Shown piece after piece: positions 9,330 through 45,304 of a stretch of 45,685 nucleotides of DNA; the first letter of the stretch is position 1, and each line of letters begins with the position of its first letter. Made by a program: the position numbers and the translations under genes. Below the pieces are notes generated by a model that worked only from the letters and a program-made list of their open reading frames with translations, made no database searches and was not told the DNA's origin. The DNA comes from Octopus bimaculoides (lineage: Eukaryota): NCBI RefSeq assembly GCF_001194135.2, contig NC_068997.1, positions 35,436,758-35,482,442 on the forward strand, read 5' to 3'.

Positions 9330-12323
9330 GTGGTGGTGACAGTGGTAGAATGTAGAAAAATTGTTTTGGAATTCTGCCACCAGCAGAGAGACTGCTTTCA
9401 CTGGCAACCTAGCTGTTTAGTAGCATACATAAATCCCAAAGTTTTCGATCTTCCCTTCTATGAAAAATTACCTCACAACATAAGCTGTTGGCTCATAAGG
9501 TTCCAAGAAGCAAGTTAGTTTGGAAAAGAAGGGTATGGAAGCTTAAGGATCCTTTGATTAGTCAGAGATTTAGAAACGTCCTAACTGAAGCATTTAATGA
9601 GGAGGAGGAGGAGTTACAGACTTGTAACAGACAATAACTGGAATTTTCTACAAGACAACCTATTGAGAGCCACAGACCAAATTTGTGGGTGGTGCAAAGT
9701 CCCAGCCAGGCCTAGGGTGATGTGGTAGTGGAACAGGGTAGTCAACAGGGCCACTAGAGCAAAGAAACAGGTTTGGAAGGATGGTGGTAGTAAAGAGTTA
9801 TATCAAGCAGCTAGAAGGGAAGCTAAGAAGCAGGTATACGTAGCCAGGAGTGAAGCAGAAAGGGAGAAGTTTGCCAATGTCGTACAGTGTGAAAACCAGA
9901 GGCTTGAAGTATTTTGGCTTGCATGACAGTGTGCCAGAGAAAATTGTGATGTGGAAGAGAAGTGTGTTTGCATGGATGATGGTTCACTTGCTGTTAGTGA
10001 CTCTGCAAAGAAAGAGGCTTGGAAGTGTCACAATGAAAGGCTACTAAATGTAGAGAATGCATGTGAGAAGGAGACTGTGCCTTAAGTAGATCTGACAGAG
10101 AGAGCAGCAATTCGAATAGACAGGCTGTACATGAGGGAGTTGTACCCAATGACCGGTGTAGTAACGTCATAGTCAACTGCTACAAAGGTAAAGGTGACAC
10201 ATTAGATAGAAATAATTACAAAGATAGCAAATTGTTGGATCAGGGGATAAAGTCAAAGAGTGGGTCATAGCCCTACTAATTAGTGGGAGAGTTAGCCTAG
10301 ATGAGATGCACTTTGTTTTTGTGCCAGGTCGAAGCACCACTGATGCTATATTTCTGGTAAGGCAACTGCAAGAGAAATTCCTAGCCAAAGATAAACCTCT
10401 GTATTTGGCTTTTGTTGACAGGAATAAAGCCTTTGACAGGGTCCCCCGATCTCTTATCTGGTGGTCAATGCGGAAAATAGGGATAGACAAGTAGTTGGTA
10501 AGAGCTGTACAGAGATGCTGTCAGTAATGTGAGGGTTGGCAACAAGTATAGCAATTAATTCAGGATACAAGTATGAGCTTGCCAAGGTCAGTCTTCATCC
10601 CCCTTCTGTTCATTGTAGTCCTTCAGGCAATAACAGAAGAATTTAAGAGGGGCTGCCTTTGGGAGCTCTTCTATGCTGATGACGTTGTTTGCATAGCTGA
10701 ATCACTTCCAGAACTAGAGAAGAAATTTCAGGTGTGGAAGCAAGGTCTAGAGTCAAAGGGCCTTAGAATTAATCTAGCAAAAACCAAAGCCTTAGTAAGT
10801 AAGAAAGCAGATGAATCACAAATCCCTTCAGATAGATGACCCAACTCAATTTGTAGAAAATGCATAGGTATAAACTCCATAAGCTATGGAGGCATAAGAG
10901 GTGCAGCAATATCTGAGGAAGGTTAACAGGGAAAATAGTTTTTGTGTGTTGAAGGTGCACAGGTACAATAAACACCACAAATGTACAGAAAATAGACTCC
11001 ATCAAATGTCAAGTGGGTAAGCTAGAGGTAGTCGATAACTTCCTTTATGTAAGTGACAAAGTCAGTAGTGGAGGTGGATACTCCAGGAGTGTAGCTGCAA
11101 GAATTGGTTGGGAAAAGTTCAGCGCTCCTACTTCTGTTGGGAACAAAAGGCCTCTCTCTCAGAGTGAAAGGCAGACTGTACGATGTAGTTATGCTACATG
11201 GTAGTGAGACATGGGTTGTGACTGCTGAAGATATGTATAGGCTTGAAGGAAATGAAGCCAGCATGCTTTGCTGGAAGTGCAATGTTAGTGTGCATGTACA
11301 ACAGAGTAAACATCTTGAGAGAAAAGCTGGTCATAAGAGGCATGAGATGTGGTGTTCTAGAGAGACAACTGTGCTAGTGTGGTCATGTGATACGTATGGA
11401 CGAGGACAGCTGTGTAAAGGAGTGCTGATCTCTAACTGTGAAGGGAACCTCTGGAAGAGGTAGACCTAAGAAGACAGGACGAGGTGGTAAAGCATGATCT
11501 TCAAATGTTGGGCCTCACGGAGGTGATGACAAGTGACTAAGAGCTCTGGCACTCTGCTATGTCTGAGAACACTCATCAGGTCAGTTGAAATCGTAGTTGT
11601 GGCCATGCCGGTGTCATGTAAATGGCACCTGTGCATCATAAATATAGTCGTTGCTGGTGCCATGTAAACGGTACCCATGGATTGTAGTCGTGGTCCTTCG
11701 CTTCCAGTGCTATGTAAATGATAGTTGTAGTTGTTTGCTGCCAGTGCCATGTAAATGACACCTATGCATTGTAGTCATGGTCATTGATGGTACCATGTAA
11801 ATCACAACTGTGAATTGTGGTCAATGCTGGTGCCATGTAAATTGGCACCCGGGAATTGTGATCATTGGTGGTGCCATGTAAGTAGCAGCTGTGAGTCGTG
11901 GTCACTGTGGGTGTCATGTAAATGGCACCTGTGCATTGTAGTTGTTGCTGTTGCCGGTGCCATGTAAATGACACCCACCCATGAATCATAGTCTTGACTG
12001 TGCTGGTGTCATGTAAATGGCACGACACCTGTGTATCGTAGTTGTGGTTGTTGCTGGTGCCATGTAAATGGCACTCACCCATGAATTGTAGTCATGATCA
12101 TTAACAGTGCCATGTAAATGGCACATGCCTGTGTATTGTGGTTGTGGTTGTTGCCAGTGTCATGTAAAAGCACCCATTACACTCCTGGAGTGGTTGGTGT
12201 TAGGAAGGGCATCCAGGTGCAGAAACCATTCCCAATCAGACTGGAACTTGGTGCAGCTCTCCGGTTCATCAGCTCCAGTCAAACTGACTAACTTATGCCA
12301 GTATGGAGAGTTAAATGATGATG
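9330..12323 (+). mobile_element. Degraded RTE LINE (partial APE, RT with Cys-rich insert, expanded 3' UTR, TGA tail)
   Basis: LEFC (APE), PGRSTTDAIFLVRQLQEK, LAFVD.NKAFDRVP, YADD at 10672-10683, HGSETW, tail TTAAATGATGATG at 12311-12323. Confidence 0.92.
11610..12175 (+). repeat. 13-unit tandem array of hairpin motif GGTGCCATGTAAATGGCACC with variable spacers, inside an RTE 3' UTR
   Basis: Unit starts 11610, 11656, 11706, 11743, 11789, 11829, 11870, 11910, 11956, 12005, 12056, 12106, 12156 (period 37-51 bp). Confidence 0.92.
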
Positions 12324-19469: not shown

Positions 19470-22390
19470 ATGCAAATGCTGTCCCTCATCCCTGTGTCTC
19501 CCCAGCCCACACCATAAGAGTTGGCACACTTAATATGTGCACATTGTAAGGTAGGTCTGGTGAGCTTGTTGGGATGCTTGAACAGAAGTATGCAGATTTG
19601 TGTTGCATCCAAGAGGTAAGGTTGACAGGAGGTTCTGCTACGTTCCTCACAGGCAAAGTGCTCAGAACAGTGATGGGGTTGGGGGCATGGGTATACTCCT
19701 TGCTGAGAAATGGGTTGATAAGGTAATCAAGGTAGTCAGAGTCTGTGATAGAATACTTAAGCTTAGACTAGTTCTACAACATAGAACAGCAACCATTATC
19801 TTAGTCTATGCCCTTCAGCCAAATCTACATGATGAACAGAAAGACTGATTTAATGACACCCTCTTGCAGATTACATCATTAACGAATGACAGGAACTTTC
19901 TCTTTGTGGCTGACAACTTCAATAGGCATGTTGGACAACATCCGGGTAGCTTCCATGGTGTGCATAGTGGCAACGGATTTGGTTCCCACGATGAGGAGGG
20001 AACCAGGCTGCTGGAGTTCTGTGATCTGCTATACTAACTTCAGGAAACCTGCCAGTTACTTGTTCATCTACCAATCTGATGTGCACAATTATCAGATTGA
20101 CTACATTATCACCAGAAAATGGGAAAGGTAGCTGCTTATAAATGCCAAAACTAACCCAAGTGAAGAATGCACCCCTCAACATAGGTTAGTTGTTAGCGAC
20201 TTCAGGATCAGGGCTAGATGGCTGCCCAAAAGACAACCAGTGTGGAAAAGAAAGGTTTGGAAGCTTAAGGGTCCTTTGAATGAACAGAAATTTAGAGAGG
20301 TATTACTTGAAAAGGAGCATCATATAATGTGGAGGACAAATGAAGGTTGCTATGGGACAACCTGCAGAAGGCTACTAACAAGATCTGTGGCTGGTGCAAA
20401 ACCCCCTCTCGTCTTTAGGTGACATGATGGTGGAACAGTGTAGTTCACTAGGCCATTAGAGAAAATAAACAGGCCTGGAATGACTGGAAGTGTGGTGGTA
20501 GCAGGGAACTGTATCAGGTAGCTAGAAGGGAAGCTAGGAGACAGGTATACTTAGCCAGAAGGAAAACAGAAAAGAGGTTTGCCAATGTTCTGCGTCATGA
20601 GGACCAGAGACTTGAAGTATTTCAAATTGCACGACATTGTGTGAGAGAAAATTGCGATGTCCACATGGATGATGGTTCACTTGCATTTAATGGTGCTGCA
20701 AAGAAAGAGGCTTGGAAATGCCACTATGGAAGGCTGCTAAATAAAGAGAATGATTGGGAGAAAGAGAGTCTGCCAAATGTTGACCCAACTGAGGGACCAG
20801 CTATCTGAATTGACAGTACTTTCATAGATAAAGCAATTTAGGATATGAAGACAGGAAAAGCTCCCGGCCCATCAGAAATCACCACTGAAATGCTTAAAAT
20901 ATCTGACAGTGTAGGCTATGGTCTAGTCACACGTATAGGTAATCAGGTTTTACATGAAGAACTCATGCCTAATGACTGGTGTAGCAACACCATAGTTAAC
21001 TGCTACAAAGGTAAAGGTGACACATTAGATAAAAATAATTACAGCGGTATCAAATTGTTGGATCAGGTGATGAAAGTTACAGAAAGGGTCATAGCCCAAC
21101 TGATTTGGGTGAGAGTTATTTCAGATGAAATGCGGTTTGGTTTTGTGTGAGGGAGAAGCACCACTGATGTTATATTCCTGGTAATACAGCTGCAAGAGAA
21201 ATATCTAGCCAAAGATAAACCTCTGTACCTGGCTTTTGTTGACATGGAGAAAGCCTTTTACAGGGTCCCCCAATCCCTTATCCGGTGGTCAATGCGGAAA
21301 CTATGGATAGACAAGTAGGTGTTGAGAACTGTACAAGCCATGTACAGGGATGCTGTCAGTAAGGTGAGGGTTGGCAATGAGTATAATGAAGAATTTTGGG
21401 TACAAGTAGGGATTCACCAAGGATCAATCCTCAGCTCCCTCTTGTTCATCAATCCTCCAAGCAATAACAGAGGAATTGAAGACTGGCTGCTCCTGGGAAC
21501 ACCTCTATGCTGATGACCTTGTTCGCATAGCTGAATTACTTCCAGAACTAGAGAAGTTTGAGGTTTGGAAACACGGTCTAGAGTTAACCTAGCAAAAATC
21601 AAAGTCTTAGTAAGTAGGAAGGCACACAAATCACTTCAAGTAGATGGCCCTGCTTGATCTGAAGAAAAGGTGTAGGTAGAAACTCCATAAGATGTACCCA
21701 GTGCAAGCTGAGGATACATAAGAGGTGCACAAGTACAATTAACACTAAAAATGTACAGATAATAGATTCCATCACATGCTAGGGGGAGAAAACTAGAAGT
21801 AGTTGATAGCTTCCATTACCTAGGTGACCAGGTCAGTAGTGTGGGTGAATGTTATAGGAGCATAGCTGCTAGATTACGAATAGATTGGGCAAAGTTCAGA
21901 GAGCTCCTACCTCTGCTGATAACAGGGCTTCTTACTCAGAGTGAAAGATGGACTGTATGATGCCTGTGTGTGAACAGCCATGCTATATAGCAGTGAAACA
22001 TGGGTTGTGACTGCTGAGGACATGCCTAGGCTAGAAAGAAATGAAGCCAATGTGCTTCACTGGATGTGTAATGTCAGTGTGCATGCATGACAGAGTGTAA
22101 GCATCCTGTGAGAGAAGTTGGGCATAAGAATCATGAGATATAGTGTGGAAGAGAGATGACTGCTGGTATCATCATGTGATGTGTATGGATGAGGACAGCT
22201 GTGTGAACAAGTGTTGGAAGACATGGGATGAGGTGATGAAGTGTAATCTCCAAATGTTCGGCCTCATAAAGGCAATGACAAGCGACAGGTCTGGCAATAT
22301 GCCATGCTTGAGAAGAGCTGTCAAGCCAAGTGTGACCATAGTCATGGTCGATGCCAGTGTTGTGTAACTGGCCTGTTGAAAGCACATTTT
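19470..22390 (+). mobile_element. Near full-length degraded RTE LINE (APE + RT), 3' tail missing
   Basis: IRVGTLN..DLCCIQEV, GGMGILLAEKWVDKV, KTGKAPGPSEITTEMLK, YKGKGD.LD.NNY.GIKLLDQVMKV, YADD at 21506-21517. Many stops and frameshifts. Confidence 0.92.
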
Positions 22391-22739: not shown

Positions 22740-24900
22740 TCTACTAACAAAGAGTGAAAAATAATTAGAAAGAAATGTTTGGAGATTGTAGACTAATCAC
22801 CTTGAAATCAGAACTGAACACTGAAAATCTTTGGCATAAGAAAAGAAGAATTGTGAATCAAATATTTACTAGTTTCCAGAGATATGAGGAGACAATGTTA
22901 CAGAGGTTCCATCCTAAGAAGATACATTCTGAAAAAATGTCTGGAGTGAGACAGTGCTTGATTAGAGAGCAGTACAGCGAGAAGAAACAAATATTGTCTC
23001 TGTGTTAAACCAACAGCATACAGAATTAATGGTGAGACCATTGAAACTGCGATTCAAAATCTTCAGGATAAAAAAGACACAGGAAGGGATTTGTTTATCA
23101 GGTACTGGTACAAAAATAACTGAACTTTTATTGTGAGTATGTTTCTGACCTTTACCAGTTATCTCTCAATAAATACATAAAAAAACTAAGCTGGTTTAGT
23201 ACCAGCGGAAATAAAATTTATACCCCCAAAACAATGCCACTCACCTATCAAAAACCTACAGTCAATTGAAGTCAGAATTTTATGTATGAAATGTATTAAG
23301 ACTCTCTGAACCTGTTTGTCTAATATTACTGTGATAGTAATATCTTCAGAGCTGAAAAAGCAGTTGAGGGATGTGTTGAACAACTCTTGGTAACAAAACT
23401 AAGATGCAAGAGTTGCATTGAAGAAACTAGGTCATAGCCTGGCTGGATTACAAAAAAGTATTTGATTCTGTTTCTCATTTTTATAGTTTTTGATAGGTGA
23501 GTGGCATTGTTATTGGGGTATAAATTTCATTTCTGCTGGCACTAAACCAGCTTAGTTTGTTTATGTATTTATTGAGAGATAACTGGTAATGGTCAGTAAC
23601 ATACTCACAATAAAAGTTCAGTTATTTTTGTACCAGTACCTGATAAACAAGTCCCTTCCTGGGTCTTTTCTATCCTGAAGATGCAAGAACCTCTTTGACT
23701 TGTTAAATTTCCCAGTACCATTATCAAGGTCATAGACAACCTGATTCTGTCCTGGGCCACCATTGTTTTTGTTATCACTGATAGGATACTATATTGTAAG
23801 AAGTATATTTCAAGGAGACATTTTCTTTGTGATGCTGTTTATACTTTCATAAACTCTGTCCTTTTTGTTAAGGAAATCTAAAGGATATGCAATTGGCTCA
23901 TGGTAAGACAGAAACATCAACTTAAGACATTACTTCTTTGTGGACTATCTGAAAATATATGTCAAATACATAGTTTGAAGGAAAGCTTTGGCCTGGCTTT
24001 GACATTATCAAAAGATATAGGTATATAGTATAACCAGGATAAATTTTCTTAAATGATTGAAATGGCTTGACTGTTTCTCTCATATTTTTTATAGCTAAAA
24101 ATATCCCATGATGGAACCTGTAACAAAGAAAGTATAACCAAGAGATATAATACCAGAGTAAAGAAAATATGGTCCTTGGAACATGACTCCTGCAATAAAT
24201 TGATAGCCCCCAATATGTTTGCTGTACCAGTGCTCATTTAAACATTAGATGCTAGATGTGATCTAGGTTATTGATGATAAAACCTGAAAATTGTTGACAA
24301 AGGTCAACAATTATATGTACTGCATTTACTTAAAATGGAACACGAAAACTGAAGATTAACATCAATTCAAGCAGCTTTTGGATGTTGCATTATATCTTAT
24401 TGACAACATCTAAACACCAAATGTTGAAGTCCTGCCTTGGATCAAGTCTGTATATGAGAGACTAACAGTATCATGAGAGTTAGAAAAGAGCTTCTCAAGG
24501 ATGTTCCCTCACTGATATCTTTGGATACACGCTCAAAAAAGTTAAACAACTTTCACAAAAGATATCAGAAGATGGGCTGTGTATATACCAGTAAAAGGTC
24601 ATGCATGGCTATATTATGGAAGGCTTCAAAGTGACAGTTACCAGAGTAGTTATTGCAAACTAACAATGTTGTTATTAGCTTTCACATTGAAGGATAAACT
24701 TTTGCAAATCAGGAGCAGGAAATAGCCACAGAATACAAAAATATGCACAAAAAGATAGGGATGCAGGTGAACCACTTGGGTATGATAACTAATGCAGGTC
24801 CTGTGGAATTTACATTGAAGATGTAGCCTCATCATGAGTAGTTTGTCAACAAGGTACTCATTGTATTAGTTACCTAGGAAGACCTTATATTGTGGTTAGA
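22740..24900 (+). mobile_element. Degraded R4/Dong-like (RLE-type) non-LTR retrotransposon
   Basis: KDTGRDLFIRYWYK, GCVEQLLV, AWLDYKKVFDSVSH, IFQGD, HYFFVDYLKIY (YMDDLKLY-like), RVKKIWS..NMFAVPVL, CRSCG..E (zinc knuckle-like). Clade assigned by motif recall. Confidence 0.7.
23061..23680. repeat. 195 bp inverted repeat with 230 bp spacer
   Basis: 23061-23255 versus reverse complement of 23486-23680: 11 mismatches, no indels. Confidence 0.95.
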
Positions 24901-26989: not shown

Positions 26990-27850
26990 TTAAATGAAGC
27001 TTTAAACGACAACTCCTACACTCTACCTATTGATGGAGACATTTTCAGCAAGCTTAATACTGGTTGCTGCTTACTTACAAATTGAAATGGATAATAGTTC
27101 AAAATAACTGTTGACAATACTCACAAAGGTCTTTACCAATATCATTGATTGCCATTTGAAATAAAAATGGCTCCAGCTATATTTCAACAAGTAATGGATA
27201 TGATGATTGTAGACAAATCTGGAGTTGCATTTTATCTGGGCAATATTATAGTGACTTGTTCAAAGAAAGAAGAATTATAATCATTTTATTGATTAGATAT
27301 CCTTTTCCATAAAATGAATTCATTTGGTTTTCAAGTAAAAGAGGACAAATGCAATCTTTTTAATGACCTCAATAAAATACCTTGTTTTTTATTATTAACA
27401 AAGCTGATCATAAACCAGACCCAGCAAATGTAGAGGCAATATTAAAAATGCCAGATCCATCAGATGTTAAGTTTCTTGGACTCCTTATTTATTACAATGT
27501 GTTCCTACTTTCCATGCTTTGTTTGCCTAAACCTTTAAACTATCTACTTCAAAAAGATAGAAAGTGGAATTGGACACCAGCATACCTTTGAAGAAGTGAA
27601 AGAATTCTTGCAATCTGATTTATTTCTAACCCATTATGACCCAAAGTTGGAAATAATACTGTCCACAGATGCTTTAGATTATGTTATTGGAGCTGTCATA
27701 TCCCATGTATTCCCAGATGGCATTGAATACGAAATTATGCACACTGCTCATACCTTGAGTAAAGTAGAAAGATACTAGTTATACTGAAAAGGAAGCATCA
27801 ACTTTAGTGAAGATAAAAGATTTCATGAAATGTTGCAGATCCTATCTTTA

Positions 27851-28670
27851 TCAGGTAAATGATACTGCTCAATATGTAGGAAAGATGTTGACAGGAATTT
27901 CATATGATGTACCTTGTGCAAACTATGGGCACACAAGAGATGCTGTGGAATAATAAGGAAGCTTAACAGAGAAAGTAATGATTGTATGTGGCAGATGCAC
28001 TGGAGACATAAAGACTACAGATACATGGGAAACTGATTTTCTCAAATTCCCTGGAGGCTCTTAAGAGATAGTTGATAATGTCTGCTATGTAAGGGACCTA
28101 ATTTGCAGTGAGGGAGTCTGTACTGAAAGTGTAATTGGTAGAATAAGAATTGGATGGAGAAACTCAGAGAACTTTTAGCTCTGTTGGCAACCAAAGGTCC
28201 CTCCTTTCTCTCTCTCTCTCTTTCTCTCTCTCTCTGTGAATGAAAGGAAGGCTGTATGATGTATCTGTACAAACAGCAATGTTACATGGTAGTGAGATAT
28301 GGGCTCTAAATGCAGAAGACCTGCAAAGACTAGAGAGGAACAAAACTTGAATGCTCTGCTGGATGTGCAATGTCAGTGTACATGTGCTACAGAGTGTTAG
28401 TGTATTGAGAGAAAAGTCAGGCATATGCAGTGTGCAAGAGAGAAGATTGCAGTGGTTTGGTCATGTGATGTGTATGAATGTAGACAGTTGTATAAAAAAG
28501 TGCTAATCACTTAAAGTGGATGGAACTTGTGGAAGAGCGAAATCCAGGAAAACATGGGCTGAAGGATTTGAAGGCTAATCTCAAGACACTAAGTATTACA
28601 AAGGAGATAAGGGACTGAGATATCTGGCACCTTACTGTACTCTAGAAGACCTGCCTATCACAGCAGAATT
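27851..28670 (+). mobile_element. Old RTE LINE 3' coding fragment inside the Gypsy element, with a (CT)n tract at about 28205-28234
   Basis: CSICRK, CGRC, AMLHGSEIW, LQWFGHV motifs. Heavily mutated. Confidence 0.8.
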
Positions 28671-31687: not shown

Positions 31688-32074
31688 ACCAGAAGATGAA
31701 CAAAGTGGTGAGAAAGTATCTACAGACTCACAGAGGGGATGACAGGAGACCAAGACCAAGACTCCTGGCAGTTTGCTGTGCTTGAAAAGACATTTCAAGC
31801 TAAGTAAAAGCATGGTTGTCTTTGCATACAGGCTTGTAGATGCTGGTGCCACATAAAAAGCACCTGTACTGGTGCCATGTAAACACACCCATGCCAGTGT
31901 TGCATAAAAGCACCCAGAACACTCTGTAAATTGGTTGGCATTAGGAAGGGCATCCAGCCATAAAAACCATGCCAAAACAGACATGGAGCCTGGGCAGCTC
32001 TTCAGTTGGCTAGCTCCTGTCAAGCCATCCAAGCCATGCTAATATGGAAAATGGACGTTAAATGATGATGATGA
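31688..32074 (+). mobile_element. Short 5'-truncated RTE 3' end
   Basis: Three GTG..CA.GTAAA..GCACC motifs, GTTGGCATTAGGAAGGGCATCCAGC block, tail GGACGTTAAATGATGATGATGA. Confidence 0.85.
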
Positions 32075-32400
32075 AGGTGATAAATGGTTTGTTCTACCAT
32101 TTGTGATTAAGGAGTAATATAAAATATAGTTTATAGATGTGAAGAAAAACTGTTTTGATGAATTTGCTGAGGCTGAGCTATTTTGCAGGTGTAGGAATGG
32201 GGTTTTATATTTTTTACACACATGTTTTTTTTATGATAGCTTTAAATAACTAATTAACACTAGTGTTTTTTTTTTCTTATAAAAACCAAGCTGCAAATAT
32301 AAATTCTCAATTACCATCCCCTGTTGAATTTGGCCATTTGGATGGCAAAAAGTTGGTTGAAATTTGATCTTTGAGGAACTCTCACTTGAATTTCAAATAT

Positions 32401-34205
32401 ATCATCATCATCATTGTTTAACATCCGCTTTCCATGCTAGCATGGGTTGGACGATTTGACTGAGGACTGGTGATCCAGATGGCTACACCAGGCTCCAATC
32501 TGATTTGGCAGAGTTTCTACAGATGGATGCCCTTCCTAACGCCAACCACTCTGAGAGTGTAGTGGGTGCTTTTATGTGCCACCAGCACGAAGGCCAGTCA
32601 GGCGGTACTAGCAACGGCCACACTCAAAATAGTGTATTTTACGTGCCACCTGCACAGAAGCCAGTCCAGTAGCACTGGCAACGATGTTACTTGAATGACT
32701 TTTCATGTGCCACCGGCACAAGTGCCAGGAAGGCGACGCTGGTAACGATCACGCTTGAAAGGTGGTGCCATCACGATTTCGCTTTCGCTTGCCCCCAACA
32801 TGTCTTCCTAAGCAGAGTTTAGTGTCCAATGGAGGAGATGCCTCAACAGGTTTTCGCAAGCAGAGTAAGCATAAGTGGGCTGGCTACATCCCTGGCAGAG
32901 GCCTTGGATTTTGGTCTCACTTGGCTTGCCGGGTCTTATCACGCACAGCATATTTCCAAAGGTCTCGGTCAGAAGTCATTGCCTCGGTGAGGCCTACTGT
33001 TTGAAGGTTGTGCTTCACCACATCATCCCAGGTCTTCCTGGGCCTGCCTCTTCCACAGGTTCCCTCAACCGCTAGGGTGTGGCACTTTTTCACACAGCTA
33101 TCCTCATCCATTCTCACCACGTGACCATACCAGTGCATTCGTCTCTCTTGCACACCACAACTGATGCTTCTTAGGTTCAACTTTTCTCTCAAGGTACTTA
33201 CACTCTGTCGAGTATGCACACTGACATTACACGTCCATCGGAGCATACTGGCTTCATTCCTTTCGAGCTTACGCATATCCTCAGCAGTCACGGCCCATGT
33301 TTCACTGCCATGTACCATGGCTGTTCGTACACATGCATCATAGAGTCTGCCTTTTACTCTGAGAGAGAAACCCTTTGTCACCAGCAGAGGTAAGAGCTCT
33401 CTAAACTTTGCCCAGGCTATTCTTATTCTAGCAGCTACACTTTCAGCGCACCCACCCACTACTAACTTGGTCACCTAGATAGCGGACGCTATCAACTACA
33501 TCTAGTTTTTCTCCCTGGAATGTGGCAGAAGTTGTTTTCTGCACACTTACAGTGTTTATTGCTCCTGAACATCTGCCACATACAAGAACTAACTTCCTAG
33601 TTAACCTTCCTTTGATATTGCCGCACCTCTTATGTGTCCATAGCTTGCACTGGGTGCATCTTATAGAGTTTCTACCTACGCCTTTTCTACAGATCAAGCA
33701 GGGCCATCTACCTGAAGGGGTTTGTGTTTTCTCTACCTTCCAACTTATTAGGACTTTGGTTTTAGCTAGGTTGACTCTAAGGCCCTTTGATTCTAGTCCT
33801 TGCTTCCACACCTGAAACTTCTCCTCTAGTTCTGATAGTGACTCAGCAATTAGTGCAAGGTCATCAGCATAGAGGAGCTCCCAGGGGCATCCTGTCTTGA
33901 ATTCCTTTGTTATCGCCTGGAGGACTATGATAAATAGGAGGGGGCTGAAGACAGAACCTTAGTGGACCCCTACCTCTACCCGGAATTCTTGACTGTACTC
34001 ATTGCCAACCGTCTCCTTACTGACAGCGTCTCTAAACATGGCTAGCACAGCTCTCACTAACCATTTTTCTATCCTTAGTTTCCTCATTGACCACCAGATG
34101 AGGGATCGGGGGACCCTGTCAGAGGCTTTCTCTATGTCAACGAAAGCCAGGTACAGAGGTTTATCCTTGGCTAGGTATTTCTCCAGAAGCTGTCTTACCA
34201 GAAAT
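32401..34205 (-). mobile_element. Youngest-looking RTE LINE copy, 5'-truncated, antisense to the host gene
   Basis: From FLVRQL to the stop at 32917 I find only one in-frame stop and one frameshift. WELLYADDL, C4HC3 insert, YLG, HGSETW, WYGHV, GRGRPRKTW, full UTR and (TGA)n tail. Confidence 0.95.
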
Positions 34206-34267
34206 GGTAGGTCATGTTATATATTTATCACTTACATATTATGACTACTTTCATTCTATTTTTCCAG

Positions 34268-34524: not shown

Positions 34525-35590
34525 GCAGAGCTATCAGTAGGGGCTGCTTGCAGCCTATGTCAATCTCTGTAAGGCATTTGAATTAGTGGACAGAGATGTC
34601 TTTTAGAGGATACTGAAGTTGTGAGGTATACCTCCTTAACTGATTAGGCTGATGACCTTATACACTGGAACAGTAATTGCAGTTTGAATTGAGGGTTCAA
34701 CATCTGACATTTTTACCCCCAGTTAGATCTGTTGTCTGTCAGTTGTGTCTTGGCTTCTATTCTGTTCAACCCGCATGGATTGGATACTTAGCAGAAAGGT
34801 GACTTGATCAAGTTGTGGTGCGCTAACTGGTAAAACTGGGATTACAAGCCTAGAATTTGCTGATGATGCAGTTGTTCTTGCTGAACCTCTGGATATCTTA
34901 AGGAGCACTCTGTTTTCATTGAGTGGGGAAGCAGAACCACTTGGCCTTAGAGTCTCTTGGGTGAAGACAAGGATCCAGTCCTTCATTGACTTCTTGGAAG
35001 AATCTATCTCGTCTGTCTCTGTTGAGATTTATAGTGGCATTAGTTGCAAGTTTAAAAAGACTTGGATGACCTGATGCAGTTGTGAACTCATTGGGCAAGG
35101 CTGTATGACACTGCCAATATCTGTGCAGGAGGACAAAGAGGTTCAGGTCTTTAAGTTTTTGGTCCTCCCTGAAGACTTGGACATGGTCTGGGGCCCTTAG
35201 GAAATGTCTGAACTGCTTTGATACCAGGAGGCTTCACATGGTTATAGGTTATTAGCCAGATTTTGTATGCAACCAACGACTCTACTCAGAAACTGGGATG
35301 TGTTCTATTATATAATTCAAGAGTGCCAGCTCAGACTGTTTGGCCATGTTGCTCAGTTTTCTGAGTTAGACCCTGCTTATCATGTTCTCTTCACTGAGGA
35401 TCTGGCTGGGTTGCTGGCTTGTGTTGGTCAACTATATGCCATGTGGTCAATGCAGATGAGGAGGTATTTTGTAGAGGCTAGGACTGACTGGGATTCTGCA
35501 TACTGTGTCACCTGAGAAGACCTAGGAATATACTGACAAATGGGGAATGAAGCAATGCACTGCAACAGTGCATGCCTCCACACCTGACCC
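34525..35590 (+). mobile_element. Degraded RTE-like LINE of a second family (no Cys-rich insert)
   Basis: AYVNLCKAFELVDRD, LEFADDAVVLAE, EAEPLGLRVSW.KT, QLRLFGHVA. Confidence 0.78.
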
Positions 35591-36416
35591 AATCATTTTG
35601 AACATATAATCTGCTAAGAGTATAGATTTAATCTCTACCTGTAATAAAAACTCAAGTAGATTAATGTTGTAGATCACAATGAAAGAGAAAAGATAGGATG
35701 GAATGAAAGAAATTTTCTACAGAAAATTTGTAAGAAATTCAAGAGTATGTGATCACTGACAAAATTTCAACTTAATGCTGCTGCTGAAATATATTTAAAT
35801 TCTTGATGATGATAGAGAAACAAAGAAAATCTAATCATTCAGTATGAAAAAGCGATTCATGAATATTATTCATATATGAGCCGATCAAAAACAGTGATGA
35901 ATTCATGATTATGTTAACATTTTTGCAAAGTTTCCCAGACCAAAGGTTGCAATGATTTACAGAGAGAGGAGCTATTGTAAAATAAGGAACAATGGAAGCT
36001 ATATTTTGCAACACAAAAGATGTTGCTGCGTTATAGAGTCTTTGTACTAAAAAGAATCAAATTCTACATAAAACTTGAAGGAACATAATGATAAAGTGTA
36101 AAAGAGAAACAAACATTTGTGTGATCTGTATACAAAGGAAACCTTGAACATTAATTTCATTAAGGATGAACCACTGAATTGAAAATCAGAAAAAGTTGCC
36201 ATGTGCAGGCATAAAATGCTTGAGACATGACTATATCACTTGCCAAATTCTAGAGGTAAATTCTGAACATATTATTTCATTGAACCTCATTAATTCAAAT
36301 ATGTCTTTTTTGTATGGTGTACATTTATATGTACATGTATATATATGTATGATGTACATGTATATATTTCTATACACATTCTAATAAATTTGTGTCTGTG
36401 TGTATGTATTGCTTTT

Positions 36417-37406: not shown

Positions 37407-37423
37407 TGTATGTATTTATGTAT

Positions 37424-39170
37424 ATGAAGATATTTCCTCCGTCTGGCTGCTTTTCTCTCTACAAAATGGAAAGTTACATTGCGGAACAGTCATTTTTACA
37501 AGTTGTATTTTTTTATCAGCCGACTAGATACATCTGCACCACCGGATGCTCCTGAACCAGTTGTTGAGTTTCTCTTCCATGAAGAATCAATGTTAGATGT
37601 GTTGAAACAATTGTCATGACTAATAATAAATTCTCATATATTCTATCTTCAGTCTTTCATTTGTTATATACTTAACAATGACTGTGAAAGTGACTGTGCT
37701 TTACCAGTAAACTACCAGGTGTAAAGTATTTGTTTTATTATCCATTAACCACAACCAATTTCCGATTTCCGGGTGGAAGGTGCTATACGGTAGCGTACTA
37801 AGATGATGGATAAAATAACACTGGATGTTTCGCTAAAAGACATATCTGTACCCAGTAGGAAGGCTTATATACACGATCTTTTGGAGAAAATGAACCAATT
37901 TGTACGTAGAATGCAGTGGAAAGTTTTCTTTTTTGACAAGGAGCTTAAACCAAACAACAAACCTGAACATGGTGACCTACTAAGAAAAGTATTCATATCT
38001 AGAAGGAACCCACCTTCTAGATATGAACACCTAACTAGATTTGAAGAAGAATTATATAGTATAGTCAAGAATGTGAAGTTCAGGAAGTACCCTAGAAGGT
38101 GTAGTATACATCAACAGAAAATCAGAAAATTACTTATCAACTTCAAGAAAGTTCTGGGGATACTTATACCAGTGGACAAAACAAATAACATTTATATTGT
38201 TAATATTGAGCTAAATAAATCTGTGATTAGGAAGGAATTATGCAGCAAATATAGACATGCTAGTAACAACGTATTAAAAAGAATAACAATACAGGGCTAC
38301 AAATCATCAGAGATCTAGCCATAGATGATACAACCGAACCCTACGTCCCTCGAAAACCCCAGATTATACTTAATGACTTAACTTTCTTATTGACCCCTCA
38401 GTTAGTAACAGAGGATCTATATTAGGGATGACGCCTTATTTTTTCTAGACAGAAGTAATAAAATACAGTTAGAAAGGCATAGAAAAAATTTCTTTAGACT
38501 TTTCAAAAATTTAGGACTAAACATTACTATAGGTTAAGATTATCGTAGAGTGAATTTACTTGATGCTACCTTCTGTCTTGATATTGGATTATTTGGACTA
38601 TTTCATAAGCTAAATGATCATATTAAGTACATTAATGTAGCGTCCAACCATCCACCCTCAATTATACAGGGACTAGTTAAGAATCTCTAGATTATCTGCT
38701 AACAATAAAATTTTTGAATCTCATGCAATTTATTATAATGCTGCTCTAGCTAGGGCTGGGTATCATGAAAAAATTCTATATATACAAGAAGCAGGCATAC
38801 ACAACACTGGTAATTCCTCCAACTGTGATGCACATTGTATACCACCACAACGTTACTGTTTGAGAACTCACTCAGATAAAGAATACAGGCCAGAAAGAAT
38901 TGGTCATATCTATGAACTTCCAACGAAAACTCATAGACACACAAGACTTCATAATTCATCTGCTTGTTCCAATCCTGTACAACACACTCAGTCAAAAAAG
39001 CCTAACAACAGATATAGGAATCAAGATGTCCTCTGGTTCAACCTGATTTGTATGTTTCAACCAAGATCGCTGGAAAATTTTTTGCTGCTTTGGACAAGTG
39101 TTTTCCTGCTCTTTTCATTAAATCCTCGCACCATTTCCTTTAAACTAGCTTCCGGTTGCATCTATATGTT
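37424..39170 (+). mobile_element. Penelope-like retroelement (Naiad-type by motif recall), internally deleted
   Basis: Upstream pLTR 37424-37663. ORF 37803-38318 SLKDISVPS..FVRRMQWKVFFF, then RDD, NLGLNITI, YINVASNHPP, YYNAAL.RAGY, VLWFN, LDKCFP. Most of the RT and the GIY-YIG domain are absent. Confidence 0.8.
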
Positions 39171-40387: not shown

Positions 40388-43252
40388 GCACTGAATAACT
40401 TCTCTCCTCCCCAAGCCTCACCCCACATTCCTTTCCCAGTTTTCAGAGTTGGCACAGTCAATGTAGGCATACTGAAAGGTAGGTCTAGTGAGATTGTAGA
40501 GATGCTTGAAAGGAGACGTGTCGATGTATGCTGCATACGAGAGGTAAAATGGAGAGGAGCTTCAGCTAGGGTCCTCACAGGCAAGGCACATAGGTACAAA
40601 ATCTTCTAGCAAGGAAACACAGATGGAGTAGGGGGTGTAGGCATACTCTTTGCAGAGAAATGGGTAGATAAAGTCATAGAGGGTATGTGATAGAGTGCTT
40701 AAGCTTAGGCTAGTCCTGCAGAACAGCACAGCTACAATTATCTCTGCCTACTCCCCACAAGTGGGCCTACCAAATGATCAGAAGGACCATTTTTATGATA
40801 CCCTTCTACAGACTACCTCGAAGACAAGTGGCAATGACCTCATCTTTGTGGTTGGAGATTTTAATGGGCATGTTGGGCAGAAATCCGATATCTTCACTGG
40901 TGTACATGGGGGCCATGGTATTGGTTCCCGAAACAATGAGGGAACTAGGCTACTGGAGTTCTGTGATGCATGTAACCTTTTAATCTGCAACACCAATTTC
41001 AGGAAACCAGACAGCCACCTGATAACCTATCAATCAGGTGACTGCTAGCCAGATTGATTTCATCCTCACCAGACAGCGGGACACAGGGTTGCTCTTAAAT
41101 ACAAAGACCCTCCCAGGTGAAGAATGTACCCCCCCAGCATAGATTAGTCATTAATGACTTTAGGCTTGAGGCCAGAAGGATACCAAGAAGCAGACCAATC
41201 CGAAAAAGAAGGATTTCGAAGCTAAAGAACCCTTCACACGGTCTGAGATTTAGGAACATCCTCATCAAGAAATTTGATGCGAGGGAGGAGGAGGAGCTAC
41301 AGACATCGGACATTGAAGGTAACTGGAAATTCCTACAGGACAGCTTACTGAGTGCCACAGACCAAGTCTGCAGATGGTGCAAAGTCCCTTCCAGACCTAG
41401 AGTTATGTGCTGATGGAATAGTACAGTAGACAAAGCCATTAGAGCAAAGAAACAGGCCTGGATGGGTGGGGGTAGCAGGGAACTGTACCAGGTAGCCAAA
41501 AGAGAGGCTAGGCGACAGGTATACATAGCCAAGGATGAAACAGAAAAGAAGAAGTTTGCCAATGTCCAGTGACGTGAGGACCAAAGTACTGAGGTATTTC
41601 GGATTGCAAGACAGTGTGTGAGCGAAAGTTGTGATGTCACAGGAGAGAAATGTGTCCGCATGGATGATGGTGCACTTGCTTTTAATGATTTGGAAAAGAA
41701 AGAGGCTTGGAGAAGCCATTATGAAAGAATGTGGAGAATGAATGGGAGGAGAGCCTTCCAAATGTTGACCCAGCTATTCGAATAGACACCTCCCTTGTAG
41801 ATTAAAGGTATGAAGCCAGGAAAAGTCCCCTGCCCATCAGGAATCACTGCTGAGATGCTTAAAACATCTGGTCGTGTGGGATATGGCTTCATCACCTGCA
41901 TTGTAAACCAGGTAGTTCATGATGGAGTCATACCCAATGACTGACATAGAAGCACCATAGACAACTGCTACAAGGGTAAAGGTGATGCTCTAGATAGAAA
42001 TAAGCACAAGGGTATCAAACTGCTGGATCAAGTGATGAAAGTCACGCAGAGGGTCATAGCCCAACTAATTAGGGAGAGAGTCTGCTTAGATGAGATGCAG
42101 TTTGTTTTTGTGCCAGGGAGAAGCACCAACGATGCTATATTCCTGGTTTGACAACTGCAGGAGAAATATCTAGCTAAAGATAAACCCTAATACTTAGCTT
42201 TTGTGGACTTAGAGAAAGCCTTTGACAGGGTCCCCTGATCCCTTATCTGGTGGGTGATGCGGAAACTGGGGATTGACAAATGGTTAATAAGGGTTATACA
42301 GGCCCTATACAGAGAGGCCATTAGGTTAGGATTGGCAATGAGTATAGTGAAGAATTCCGCGTAGTAGTAGGGGTCCACCAAGGTTCAGCCCAAAGTCCCC
42401 TTTTATTCATCATAGTCTTCTAGGCAATAACAGAGGAATTCAAGACAGGTTGCCTCTGGGAGCTCTTCTATGCTGATGAACTGGCCCTCATAGCAGAACC
42501 ACTACCAGAACTAGAAAAGAAATTCCGGGTGTAGAAGCAAGGTTTAGAATCAAAAGATCAAAGTTCTAGTAAGTAGGAAGTCGAAAACATCACACACCCA
42601 CTCAGGTAGGTGGCCCTGCTTGATGTGTAGAAAAGGTAGGTAGAAACTTCATAAGATGTACTCAGTGTAAGCTATGGACACAAGAGGTGCAGCAACATCA
42701 AAGGAAGATTAACTGAGAAGATAGCTTTCATGTGCGGCAGATGCACAGGGGCAATAAACACCACAGATGCTCAGAAAATAGATTCCATCACACTCCAGGG
42801 GGAGAAACTAGAAGTAGTTGATAGCTTCCGCTGCCTAGGTGACCAAGTTAGTAGTGGGGGGTGGATGCTCAGAGAGTGTTACCACTAGAATAAGAATAGC
42901 CTAGGCACAGTTTAGAAAGCTTCTACCCCTACTGGTGACAAAGGGTCTCTCACTGAAAGTGAAAGGTAGATTGTACGATGCATGTGTGCGAACTGCCATG
43001 CTTCGTGGCAGTGAAACATGGGCCGTGACTGGAGGACATGCGTAGGCTCAAAAGAAATGAAGCTAGCATGATCCGTTGGATGTGTAATGTCAGTGTGCAC
43101 ACACGACAGAGTGTAAGCGCCTGAGAAAAATGTTGGACAGAAGAAGCATAGGATGTGGCGTGCAAGAGAGACGTTTGCACTGGTATGGTCATGTACTACG
43201 GATGGACGAGAGCTGTGTGAAGAAGTGCCACTCCCAAACATTTCAAGGAATC
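40388..43252 (+). mobile_element. Near full-length degraded RTE LINE lacking its 3' UTR and tail
   Basis: FRVGTVNVG..VDVCCIREVKW, SAYSPQVGL, GDFNGHVG, LLEFCDACNL, YADE at 42469-42480, Cys-rich insert, SETW, WYGHV. Closely similar to 3543-3868. Confidence 0.93.
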
Positions 43253-43662
43253 TGTATGCTCACATTTTTGCAGATGCTTGTATGAGTGAGTGTACTTGCG
43301 CTATGCAGTTTGCCTGAGAGTATTTATACATCCATATATGCTAACGGTTATTTTTAATACTTTTATTGCTGGATTGATTCTCTTTTTGCCATCTGTGATT
43401 TTATTTTTGTTCTTCTATATAAATGAAGATATTTCCTCTGTCTAGCTGCTTTTCTCTCTACAAAATGGAAAGTTACTTTGAGGAACAGTCATTTTAATGA
43501 ATTGTATTTATTTATCAGACGACGAGATACATCCGCACCACCGGATGCTCCTGAACCAGTTGTTGAGTGTCTCTTCCAAGAGGAATGAATGCTAGATATG
43601 TTGAAATAATTGTCATGATTAACAATAAATTCTCTTATATTCCATCTTCTGTATTTCATTTG
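43253..43662 (+). mobile_element. 3' terminal region and pLTR of the Penelope-like element
   Basis: 43423-43662 is a 240 bp direct repeat of 37424-37663 (about 90% by eye) ending at a (TA)n tract. Confidence 0.75.

Positions 43663-43704
<42 letters not shown>
43663..43704. repeat. (TA)n microsatellite
   Basis: Direct observation. Confidence 0.95.
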
Positions 43705-44640: not shown

Positions 44641-45304
44641 ATCACATTGGCCTTTTCCGTAAAAAGTGTTGGAGGGAAAGAGGGAAACGACGTCGTAAAA
44701 GCGAAAGAGATAGAGAGAGCGCGATTTCTTTTGAAGTTGGCATGTGTGTGTGTGTGTGTGTAATGTTGCTGCTGTGTGTATGTGTGAGAGAGGGAGAGAG
44801 AGAGATAACTAAAATTATTTTTATTTCCTTTTTATAGTGAGTATGCGAGACAGAAAGTGTGGTGAAGTTCTTTTGTTAGTGAGAGAGAGTGAGGTTATGT
44901 ATGTATGTATGTATGAATGGCTACAGCGACACACACAGGTTGTTATGTATGTGTAACTGAATCCATTCACACACACACACATACATAACAACCTGCATTT
45001 GTGTGTGTGTGTCACTGTAGCCATTCATACATACATAACCTCTCTGTCTCACACTAACAATAGAACTTCACCACACTCTCTGTCTCGCATACTCACTATA
45101 AAAAGGAAATAAAAATAATTTCAGTTATTTCTCTTTCTTTCTCTCTCTCCCTCTCTCTCACACATACACACACCAGCAACATAACACACACACACACACG
45201 TCAACTTCAAAAGAAATCGCGCTCTCTCTATCTCTTTCGCTTTTACAACGTCAATTCCCTCTGTCCCTCCAACACTTTTTACGGAAAAGGCCGATGTGAT
45301 GTAA
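44636..45304. repeat. About 670 bp palindrome containing mirrored microsatellites
   Basis: 44641-44740 versus reverse complement of 45201-45300: 94/100. Pairing continues inward to a loop of about 13 nt at 44955-44967. Confidence 0.95.

What the first reader, a model, noticed from the sequence alone, without database searches (positions are those of the whole stretch)
33569..33700. PHD-finger-like C4HC3 module inserted inside the reverse transcriptase of the dominant RTE family
Seen: between YADD and YLG the minus-strand frame reads CLIC-x10-CTQC-x4(KLWT)-HKRC-x14-CGRC, which is Cys4-His-Cys3 spacing with a Trp before the His. Decayed versions occur at about 10840-10960, 21650-21730, 27865-28000 and 42615-42740, so it is a family trait. 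The second RTE family (34525-35590) lacks it. Established: PHD fingers read histone H3 tails and are known from ORF1 of CR1/L2/Jockey-group LINEs. Inference: an RT-internal reader could tether integration or the RNP to marked chromatin. I cannot confirm whether this position has been described.
Basis: partly seen in the sequence, partly recalled or inferred. Interest (0 to 1): 0.7.

Follow-up and report, generated by a model that had tools for sequence, protein, structure and literature searches.

The report
PHD zinc finger inside RTE reverse transcriptase
A dead copy of an octopus jumping gene (an RTE-type LINE) carries a genuine PHD-type zinc finger inside its reverse transcriptase. The same insert is conserved in relatives from cnidarians, bivalves and lancelets, so it may steer where these elements insert, but that function is untested.

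Summary
Window 33569-33700 (minus strand) encodes C-x2-C-x10-C-x2-C-x4-H-x2-C-x14-C-x2-C. It lies between RT motif 6 (LRVNLAKTKVL) and motif 7 (YLGD) of a 5'-truncated, inactivated RTE-like LINE copy at 32401-34216.

- **Other copies:** four further copies in the window carry decayed versions. A second, BovB-like RTE family at 34544-35600 lacks the insert.
- **Identity:** it is a real PHD finger. It passes the Pfam PF00628 cut-off narrowly here (24.6-25.8 bits against 24), and homologues score 32-37 bits. All 50 best Foldseek matches to an AlphaFold2 model are PHD fingers.
- **Conservation:** 114 of 120 homologues keep all eight ligands, which are 98-100% conserved among variable neighbours.
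- **Distribution:** named homologues come from Octopus, Mercenaria, Hydractinia and Branchiostoma. The domain matches 977 protein clusters (50% identity).
- **Closest solved relatives:** Pygopus, then PHF2, PHF13, BPTF and TAF3, which I know as H3K4me2/3 readers. Both aromatic cage positions are conserved.
- **Against a histone role:** the domain is strongly basic (mean charge +6.3). It also occupies the position of R2 "motif 6a", which contacts target DNA.

A chromatin-reading role during integration is plausible (about 0.45) but untested. PHD fingers are known in LINE ORF1s, and inside the RT of Chlamys Penelope-like elements. I found no paper describing this position, so I rate it a new variant of a known kind.

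The parts
33569..33700 (-). PHD-type C4HC3 zinc-finger core (Cys1 to Cys7/8): CLICRKGVGRNSIRCTQCKLWTHKRCGNIKGRLTRKLVLVCGRC
   Evidence: Direct translation. Pfam PHD E=1e-5, 24.6-25.8 bits against a cut-off of 24. Only strict pattern hit in six frames, none in 200 shuffles.
33527..33727 (-). The 67-aa stretch modelled as an isolated domain (PHD plus flanks, including the conserved G-R-W-P before Cys1)
   Evidence: AlphaFold2 mean pLDDT 75, core 81-89. Foldseek against PDB: all top 50 are PHD fingers, TM 0.5-0.68, rmsd 2.1-3.0 A.
33860..33871 (-). RT motif 5 catalytic YADD
   Evidence: Translation. 98-99% conserved in homologues.
33749..33781 (-). RT motif 6 (LRVNLAKTKVL), immediately upstream of the insert
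   Evidence: Translation. V, N, K, T and K are 95-100% conserved. Alignments to L1 ORF2p and R2 end here.
33470..33481 (-). RT motif 7 (YLGD, primer grip), downstream of the insert
   Evidence: Translation. 97-99% conserved.
32401..34216 (-). The whole focal element copy: 5'-truncated RTE-like LINE with RT motifs about 3 to 7 plus PHD, thumb/C-terminal region to the stop codon at 32917-32919, a 3'UTR, and an (ATG)n tail at 32401-32415
   Evidence: tblastn and blastn against the window and homologues. 3' end read directly. RVT_1 E=3e-18.
33959..33961 (-). In-frame TAA replacing the Gln of the conserved GVHQGS motif (inactivating)
   Evidence: Homologues have Q.
33452..33456 (-). Frameshift just after motif 7 (DQVSSG | GCAESVAARI)
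   Evidence: The two tblastn segments abut here in different frames.
10828..10976 (+). Decayed PHD of a second copy (element about 9801-11579): stops and one frameshift
21636..21734 (+). Decayed PHD of a third copy (element about 20422-22289): Cys2 codon is a stop, W changed to R, C-terminal half deleted
27851..28016 (+). Decayed PHD of a fourth, more divergent copy (about 27683-28563)
42602..42762 (+). Decayed PHD of a fifth copy (element about 41447-43255): two frameshifts
34544..35600 (+). Second, BovB-like RTE family fragment without the insert (FADD ... VSWVKTRIQSF, then no Cys/His motif); serves as an internal negative control

Best explanation
**What it is (shown, about 0.9).** The module is a bona fide PHD-type cross-brace zinc finger of about 46 aa. 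It is built into the palm of the reverse transcriptase, in the loop between RT motif 6 and the beta-hairpin of motif 7 (the primer grip). The host element belongs to an ancient metazoan lineage of RTE-like LINEs whose single ORF of about 1100 aa reads APE endonuclease, RT with embedded PHD, then a C-terminal domain. The window holds only dead copies, so any function belongs to the active family, not to this locus.

**How it most likely works (inferred, about 0.45).** The finger is held rigidly against the RT next to where the primer and target DNA enter. There it may act as a reader of a histone tail, most likely H3 with methylated K4. It would use a two-walled aromatic pocket made of the Y/W/F two residues before Cys1 and the invariant Trp two residues before the His. 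Target-primed reverse transcription would then start preferentially on, or be stabilised at, nucleosomal DNA carrying that mark.
For: **Identity**
- The C4HC3 spacing is canonical.
- Pfam PHD matches 50 of 50 family members, best E=6e-9.
- The AlphaFold2 domain model matches only PHD fingers in its Foldseek top 50: TAF3, ARID5, BAZ2A/B, BPTF, CHD4/5, Pygo, BHC80, MOZ and PHF13, with probability 0.77-1.00.
- In a 711-aa model of homologue P0017, the PHD and both linkers have pLDDT 94-97 and pTM is 0.87. The isolated domain scores 75, which suggests the finger is docked on the RT rather than tethered.
- The whole model matches human L1 ORF2p and R2 target-primed reverse transcription complexes at E=1e-23 to 1e-21.

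**Selection**
- 114 of 120 homologues keep all eight ligands, and 99 keep the exact 10/4/14 spacing.
- Ligands are 98-100% conserved while neighbouring positions are 20-50% conserved.

**Breadth**
- Named homologues come from Octopus, Mercenaria, Hydractinia and Branchiostoma.
- 977 clusters at 50% identity match the domain alone.
- Full-length members show APE + RT + PHD.

**Reader hypothesis**
- A profile of the domain hits Pygopus PHD best (E=1e-7), then PHF2, KDM5B, PHF13, BPTF, Alfin-like, PHF23, TAF3, Set3, DIDO1, MLL1, KDM5A and PHF8. From established knowledge these are essentially all H3K4me2/3 readers.
- The Trp before the His is present in 99 of 100 sequences. The aromatic before Cys1 is Y, W, F or H in 109 of 114, and it aligns with the Tyr of Pygo's YPCGIC.
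- CR1/L2 ORF1 PHDs also hit Pygo structures best (PMC4120745, Table 1).
- A non-RT protein with a 2A-like peptide plus two PHDs matches this profile at 98% probability.

**Position**
- R2 motif 6a, by its numbering an RT insert following motif 6, wedges into target DNA (PMC11601368, PMC11204384, PMC12247875).
Against: - No binding data exist for any LINE PHD (PMC4120745 says so explicitly).
- The domain is strongly basic: mean K+R minus D+E is +6.3, range +2 to +12. The positions around Cys3/Cys4 that bind H3R2 through Asp or Glu in TAF3 and Pygo are S, T, G or K here. Canonical H3-tail binding is therefore not assured.
- Foldseek does not separate K4me3 readers from K4me0 readers; BAZ2A and BHC80 score as well as the others.
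- The positional analogy with R2 motif 6a favours DNA contact at least as much as histone contact.
Confidence: 0.45

Rival explanations
1. The finger is a nucleic-acid-binding zinc module. It would contact target DNA near the nick, or the RNA template or cDNA duplex, as a functional counterpart of R2 motif 6a or of the C-terminal CCHC knuckles of other LINE ORF2 proteins.
For: - The domain has a net charge of +6.3 with conserved R/K at positions 5, 6, 24, 25, 30, 32 and 43.
- It is inserted after motif 6, where R2's motif 6a lies, and motif 6a wedges into upstream target DNA (PMC11601368, PMC11204384).
- The model shows a rigid connection to the palm next to the primer grip.
- Pfam finds no other zinc finger in the two full-length ORFs.
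Against: - Sequence signatures specific to methyl-lysine readers are conserved for no obvious reason under this model: the invariant Trp before the His and the aromatic before Cys1.
- The nearest solved relatives are histone readers, not DNA-binding extended PHDs.
- PHF13, a close match, is also basic, and to my knowledge it reads H3K4me3, so basic charge does not exclude histone reading.
Confidence: 0.3
2. The finger is a structural or protein-interaction module with no chromatin or nucleic-acid ligand. It would brace the palm-thumb junction through zinc, or recruit a host protein, much as Pygo PHD binds BCL9.
For: - pLDDT is very high across the PHD and both linkers only when the finger is modelled within the RT, which suggests an intramolecular interface.
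- Pygo, the best sequence match, uses its PHD for a protein partner as well (PDB titles).
Against: A purely structural role does not explain conservation of surface aromatic and basic residues over cnidarian-to-chordate distances. Related RTE RTs, such as the second family in this window, function with no such insert.
Confidence: 0.2
3. The motif is a chance Cys/His pattern or an artefact of reading a decayed repeat.
For: The focal copy is a pseudogene with a stop and a frameshift.
Against: There were no such patterns in 200 shuffles. The motif is present in 114 of 120 homologues from several phyla, with invariant ligands. Pfam and Foldseek both assign it to the PHD family.
Confidence: 0.01

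Closest known systems
PHD fingers of CR1/L2-group LINE ORF1 proteins (Kapitonov & Jurka 2003; Metcalfe & Casane 2014, PMC4120745)
   Same: Both are about 50-aa C4HC3 PHD fingers carried by an APE-type LINE. Both hit Pygopus PHD structures (2vpb, 3zpv) best (Table 1 of PMC4120745). A non-RT protein with two such PHDs matches this family's profile at 98% probability. Function is untested in both.
   Different: Those fingers sit in ORF1 or at the N-terminus upstream of the endonuclease. This one is embedded in the RT palm between motifs 6 and 7 of a single-ORF element. That paper describes ORF2 as structurally highly constrained.
PHD insertions in Chlamys Penelope-like elements of Chlamydomonas (Craig et al. 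2021, PMC8557442)
   Same: Both are PHD fingers inserted inside a retroelement RT, which sets a precedent for RT-internal accessory domains. The same paper reports a SAP domain between RT7(E) and the thumb.
   Different: Those belong to a different retroelement class (PLE with a GIY-YIG endonuclease) and a different site (between RT2a and RT3(A), or inside the EN). They occur in five algal families, not in a pan-metazoan lineage.
R2 reverse transcriptase motif 6a (PMC11601368, PMC11204384, PMC12247875)
   Same: Both are lineage-specific inserts in the RT after motif 6. In R2 the insert protrudes from the RT and wedges into upstream target DNA during target-primed reverse transcription.
   Different: Motif 6a is a short loop, not a zinc-finger domain. 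R2 has a restriction-like endonuclease and is site-specific. No sequence similarity was found.
Pygopus, TAF3 and PHF13 PHD fingers (cellular H3K4me2/3 readers)
   Same: They are the best sequence matches (Pygo E=1e-7; PHF13 E=7e-4 with the single window sequence) and structural matches (TAF3 TM 0.57-0.62, rmsd 2.1 A). They share the YPCGxC and C-x2-C-x2-W-x-H signatures.
   Different: The RTE finger lacks the acidic loop residues of Pygo and TAF3, is strongly basic, and is an internal domain of a polymerase.
Octopus RTE-2_OV / O. bimaculoides RTE (Petrosino et al. 2022, PMC9115989)
   Same: It is an octopus RTE-clade LINE with a single ORF of 1109 aa carrying EN, RT and one zinc finger that the authors call relatively rare in RTE elements. 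Full-length homologues here are 1096-1100 aa, and Pfam finds only one zinc finger in them, the PHD.
   Different: The paper labels the finger C2H2 and does not place it inside the RT. I could not obtain its sequence, so whether it is the same module is unproven.
Chromodomains of chromoviral (Ty3/gypsy) integrases and the RAG2 PHD finger (from my own knowledge, not tested here)
   Same: Both are histone-mark readers attached to transposition machinery that bias where DNA is cut or integrated.

Membership tests
PHD finger (Pfam PF00628) | Cys4-His-Cys3 ligand pattern with canonical spacing | tested here: met
   C-x2-C-x10-C-x2-C-x4-H-x2-C-x14-C-x2-C at 33569-33700. 114 of 120 homologues have the pattern, 99 with identical spacing.
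PHD finger (Pfam PF00628) | Profile score at or above Pfam's gathering cut-off (24 bits) | tested here: met
   The isolated window domain scores 24.6-25.8 bits, but 21 bits when scored within the 432-aa fragment. Homologues score 32-37 bits. 50 of 50 members match. The result is marginal for this decayed copy and clear for the family.
PHD finger (Pfam PF00628) | Cross-brace two-zinc fold with a short two-stranded sheet | tested here: met
   The AlphaFold2 model (pLDDT 81-89 in the core; 94-97 in the RT context) has two short strands. All top 50 Foldseek PDB hits are PHD fingers, rmsd 2.1-3.0 A. This is a prediction only.
PHD finger (Pfam PF00628) | Conserved aromatic residue two positions before Cys7 | tested here: met
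   F in 54 and Y in 46 of 100 at position 39. The focal window copy has L at this position (VLVC), a decay.
PHD finger (Pfam PF00628) | Binds two zinc ions | not testable with these tools
   Needs metal analysis of purified protein.
H3K4me2/3-reading PHD subclass (Pygo, TAF3, BPTF, ING type) | Trp two residues before the His ligand (cage wall) | tested here: met
   W in 99 of 100. It is present in the window copy (KLWTH).
H3K4me2/3-reading PHD subclass (Pygo, TAF3, BPTF, ING type) | Second aromatic wall contributed from just before Cys1 | tested here: met
   Y, W, F or H at position -2 in 109 of 114. It aligns with the Tyr of Pygo's YPCGIC in the HMM alignment. That this Pygo residue lines the K4 pocket is from my memory of the literature.
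H3K4me2/3-reading PHD subclass (Pygo, TAF3, BPTF, ING type) | Acidic residues for H3R2 and the N-terminus | tested here: not met
   Positions 16, 17, 19 and 20 are S, T, G, K or H. Net charge is +6.3.
H3K4me2/3-reading PHD subclass (Pygo, TAF3, BPTF, ING type) | Measured binding to methylated H3K4 peptide | not testable with these tools
   Needs peptide binding assays.
RTE-clade LINE | Single long ORF with N-terminal APE endonuclease followed by RT | tested here: met
   Full-length homologues P0290 and P0274 show Exo_endo_phos at 67-301, RVT_1 at about 610-820 and PHD at about 830-873. The window copies are 5'-truncated.
RTE-clade LINE | 3' end made of a short tandem repeat rather than poly(A) | tested here: met
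   (ATG)n at 32401-32415 ends the similarity between copies.
RTE-clade LINE | RT phylogeny placing it in RTE (RTE, RTEX or Proto2) | not tested
No reference LINE set was available. The subclade is unresolved.
LINE ORF1-type PHD (CR1/L2) | PHD located in ORF1 or upstream of the endonuclease | tested here: not met
   Here the PHD lies between RT motifs 6 and 7.
R2-type motif 6a | Lineage-specific insert in the RT after motif 6 | tested here: met
   There are about 90 aa between KTK and YLG, against about 24 in L1 ORF2p. Alignments to L1 and R2 stop at motif 6. That R2 motif 6a lies between motifs 6 and 7 is inferred from its numbering.
R2-type motif 6a | Contacts target DNA during target-primed reverse transcription | not testable with these tools
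   Needs a structure of the complex or crosslinking.

The most novel reading that the evidence does not exclude
The RT-embedded PHD finger is a working methyl-lysine (H3K4me2/3-type) reader, fixed beside the primer grip. It would couple initiation of target-primed reverse transcription to marked nucleosomes. This ancient RTE lineage would then choose insertion sites by chromatin state through its polymerase. That would be the first chromatin reader built into a LINE reverse transcriptase, acquired by domain shuffling from the PHD pool used in CR1/L2 ORF1s.
Probability: 0.3. Interest if true: 0.75.

Novelty: new variant of a known kind. Interest (0 to 1): 0.5.

Why it matters
How APE-type LINEs choose insertion sites beyond the short endonuclease consensus is an open question, and no LINE PHD finger has ever been tested.

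This family offers a compact, deeply conserved reader-like domain fused into the enzyme that performs integration. Natural controls sit in the same genome: an RTE family without the insert, and octopus RTE copies reported to be recently active (PMC9115989). If the finger reads a histone mark, it would explain insertion bias. It would also link LINE spread to germline chromatin. Finally, it would suggest a way to direct engineered retrotransposon-based gene insertion.

If the finger instead binds DNA, it would be an independent solution to the job done by R2 motif 6a. In either case it shows that the LINE RT core tolerates a whole inserted domain between motifs 6 and 7.

Tried and rejected
1. 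**Chance pattern:** rejected.
2. **C1 or RING domain instead of PHD:** these Pfam families score below PHD and below their own cut-offs.
3. **Wider taxonomy, protein search:** a second protein search with a divergent variant (RWPCGVCNKGVGSNSLQC...) returned only unnamed metagenomic fragments.
4. **Wider taxonomy, cluster look-up:** the look-up gave no names. It did yield full-length members.
5. **Wider taxonomy, contig look-up:** this gave an unnamed ENA assembly.
6. **Is RTE-2_OV's "C2H2" finger this domain?** The sequence is not in the held supplements, so this is unresolved.
7. **Literature:** nine full-text searches combining PHD or plant homeodomain with RTE, RTEX, non-LTR, ORF2, RT domain or AlphaFold found no description of a PHD inside an RTE RT. 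Kapitonov & Jurka 2003 is not held. Repbase, Dfam and Repbase Reports could not be consulted, so prior description there cannot be excluded.
8. **Pfam PF27108:** this family is precomputed on many homologues but is absent from the local Pfam copy, so its meaning is unknown.
9. **Consensus ORF:** Intact natural homologues (P0017, P0001) were used for modelling instead.
10. **Pocket geometry:** model coordinates and PAE are not returned by the tools, so pocket geometry and the PHD-RT interface could not be inspected.
Full report
**Observation.**
Reading the minus strand from 33700 to 33569 gives CLIC-RKGVGRNSIR-CTQC-KLWT-HKRC-GNIKGRLTRKLVLV-CGRC, which is the reported C4HC3 spacing. It lies in one frame with YADD (33871-33860) and the motif 6 sequence LRVNLAKTKVL (33781-33749) upstream, and with YLGD (33481-33470) downstream.

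The surrounding sequence is a 5'-truncated LINE copy running from about 34216 to an (ATG)n tail at 32401-32415. It is dead: a TAA replaces the Gln of GVHQGS at 33961-33959, and a frameshift follows motif 7 near 33452-33456. A strict C4HC3 pattern occurs only here in the six frames of the window and never in 200 shuffles.

Four more copies of the same family, all on the + strand, carry recognisable but broken versions at 10828-10976, 21636-21734, 27851-28016 and 42602-42762. The second RTE family at 34544-35600 reads FADD...LRVSWVKTRIQSF followed by a stretch with no Cys/His motif.

**Is it a PHD finger?**
- *Pfam.* The isolated window domain scores 24.6-25.8 bits for PF00628 against a cut-off of 24, with E=1e-5. 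Intact homologues score 32-37 bits. All 50 members of a domain alignment match PHD, whereas C1 and RING families score lower and below their cut-offs.
- *Isolated model.* An AlphaFold2 model of the 67-aa window stretch, built with 114 homologues, has core pLDDT of 81-89. Its 50 best Foldseek matches in the PDB are all PHD fingers: TAF3, ARID5, BAZ2A/B, BPTF, CHD4/5, Pygo, BHC80, MOZ and PHF13. Probabilities are 0.77-1.00, TM-scores 0.5-0.68, and rmsd 2.1-3.0 A over 47-53 columns.
- *Model in context.* In the 711-aa homologue P0017, the finger (residues 441-486) and both linkers reach pLDDT 94-97, with pTM 0.87. The whole model matches human L1 ORF2p and R2 target-primed reverse transcription complexes at E=1e-23 to 1e-21.

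The refutation criterion "does not fold as a cross-brace zinc finger" is therefore not met, within the limits of prediction.

**Conservation and distribution.**
A search with the 432-aa fragment found 1131 proteins at E<1e-5. The closest named ones are from Octopus bimaculoides and O. vulgaris, which identifies the window as octopus. Others come from Hydractinia (Cnidaria), Mercenaria (Bivalvia) and two Branchiostoma species, at 46-53% identity over the whole fragment. Most carry precomputed RVT_1 + PHD hits.

Of the 120 best hits, 114 have the complete ligand pattern and 99 have the exact 10/4/14 spacing. The six exceptions are point-damaged. In the alignment the eight ligands are 98-100% conserved. 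Also conserved are Pro before Cys1, G-V-G, N-S-I, the Trp two residues before the His, a Leu, and an F/Y two residues before Cys7. Interspersed positions are only 20-50% conserved.

The domain alone matches 977 clusters (50% identity) among 1.84 billion representatives, mostly short decayed ORFs. Full-length members of 1096-1100 aa show APE endonuclease, RT, PHD and a C-terminal region in one ORF. The insert is thus an old, selected trait of a pan-metazoan RTE-like lineage rather than a mollusc peculiarity.

**Position in the enzyme.**
The finger sits between the motif 6 strand (model residues 417-427) and the four-strand sheet that carries motif 7 (499-521), just before the thumb helices. About 90 residues separate KTK from YLG here, against about 24 in human L1 ORF2p. 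Sequence alignments to solved L1 and R2 proteins stop at motif 6.

In R2 proteins, a lineage-specific insert called motif 6a, which by its numbering follows motif 6, protrudes from the RT. [quoted passage not shown] By topology, the RTE finger is therefore likely to lie near incoming target DNA.

**What kind of PHD?**
A profile of 50 family domains hits Pygopus PHD fingers best among all PDB sequences (E=1.2e-7, sharing YPCGxC ... aILC ... C-x-K-W-x-H). PHF2, KDM5B, PHF13, BPTF, Alfin-like, PHF23, TAF3, Set3, DIDO1, MLL1, KDM5A and PHF8 follow. With the single window sequence, PHF13 is best. From established knowledge, these are H3K4me2/3 readers.

Two positions that form the methyl-lysine pocket in such readers are conserved here. 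The Trp before the His is present in 99 of 100 sequences. An aromatic two residues before Cys1 is Y, W, F or H in 109 of 114.

Against this, the domain is strongly basic, with a mean net charge of +6.3. It lacks acidic residues where TAF3 and Pygo bind H3R2. Foldseek scores K4me0 readers such as BAZ2A and BHC80 equally well.

**Relation to known transposon PHDs.**
- Metcalfe & Casane (PMC4120745) found PHD fingers in many CR1 and L2 ORF1 types. Their best HHpred hits were the same Pygopus structures (2vpb, 3zpv). They stated that no functional study of a LINE PHD exists, and they described ORF2 as structurally constrained.
- One protein from the representative search, P0211, has a 2A-like DIESNPGP peptide followed by two PHDs and no RT. 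It matches the RTE finger profile with 98% probability, E=9e-14. This is consistent with one LINE-associated PHD type that has been shuffled between positions.
- Craig et al. (PMC8557442) report PHD fingers inserted within the RT (between RT2a and RT3(A)) or within the EN of Chlamys Penelope-like elements. An RT-internal PHD therefore has a precedent in another retroelement class and at another site.
- Petrosino et al. (PMC9115989) describe octopus RTE-2_OV (1109 aa) as having EN, RT and a "C2H2 zinc finger ... relatively rare in RTE elements". Pfam finds only one zinc finger, the PHD, in the full-length homologues here. This may be the same module under another name, but I could not verify it.

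I found no held paper that places a PHD between RT motifs 6 and 7 of an RTE element. Repbase and Dfam could not be checked.

**Explanation and rivals.**

| Reading | Confidence |
|---|---|
| It is a genuine PHD finger and a selected family trait embedded in the RT | about 0.9 |
| It reads a histone tail (H3K4-methyl type) and so anchors or licenses target-primed reverse transcription on marked nucleosomes | about 0.45 |
| It is a basic zinc module that grips target DNA or template, a counterpart of R2 motif 6a or of the CCHC knuckles of other LINEs | about 0.3 |
| It is a structural brace or a host-protein docking site | about 0.2 |
| It is chance | excluded |

The first two functional roles are not mutually exclusive.

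**Verdict.**
I rate the novelty as a new variant of a known kind: PHD fingers in transposons are known, while this RT site and this LINE lineage are apparently undescribed. Interest is moderate (0.5). The window itself holds only dead copies, and the architecture is already visible in domain databases. The feature is nevertheless deeply conserved, experimentally tractable, and bears directly on how LINEs choose their targets.

Noticed in passing
window 1-166 (minus strand): A fragment 96% identical to 33701-33866 of the focal copy, much closer than the other copies (67-80%). It is a young second copy of the same subfamily, cut by the window edge exactly where its PHD would begin.
   Followed up: partly
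window 31903-32076 (+) and 32401-32576 (-): A second RTE 3'-tail fragment lies tail-to-tail with the focal element. Each ends in an (ATG)n/(CAT)n run. It could be a severely 5'-truncated copy or a SINE sharing the LINE tail.
   Followed up: partly
window 32565-32720 (minus strand, 3'UTR of the focal element): The 3'UTR appears to contain a few internal repeats of about 45-60 nt around a ...ggtggcac(a/g)t(a/g)aaa... core. blastn aligns the region to 4162-4252 in two registers.
   Followed up: no
window 23059-23255 / 23486-23682: A 197-nt inverted repeat, 94% complementary, with arms 230 nt apart. This is a foldback or MITE-like structure.
   Followed up: no
window 44636-45305: Nested inverted repeats: 44636-44757 with 45184-45305 (93%), and 44786-44911 with 45022-45147 (91%). 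Together they form a foldback-like element of about 670 bp.
   Followed up: no
window 37417-37670 and 43416-43669: A 254-nt direct repeat pair at 89% identity that did not match the RTE protein queries; probably another repeat family.
   Followed up: no
protein P0002 (UniRef, Octopus bimaculoides, 653 aa): An annotated octopus 'reverse transcriptase domain-containing protein' joins an RT-PHD fragment of this family (83% identical to the window copy) to a LETM1-like C-terminal half (PF07766). It is either a chimeric gene model or an exonised TE fragment.
   Followed up: no
protein P0211 (ENA metagenome assembly, 228 aa): A 2A-like peptide (DIESNPGP) is followed by two PHD fingers of the same YPCGxC...W-H-H type and a proline-rich linker, with no RT. 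It looks like the 5' region of another LINE and hints that this PHD type moves between LINE positions.
   Followed up: partly
homologues: A precomputed Pfam family, PF27108.1, co-occurs with the PHD hit on many homologues. It is absent from the local Pfam copy, so I could not learn what it describes. It might be a recent model covering this kind of finger.
   Followed up: partly
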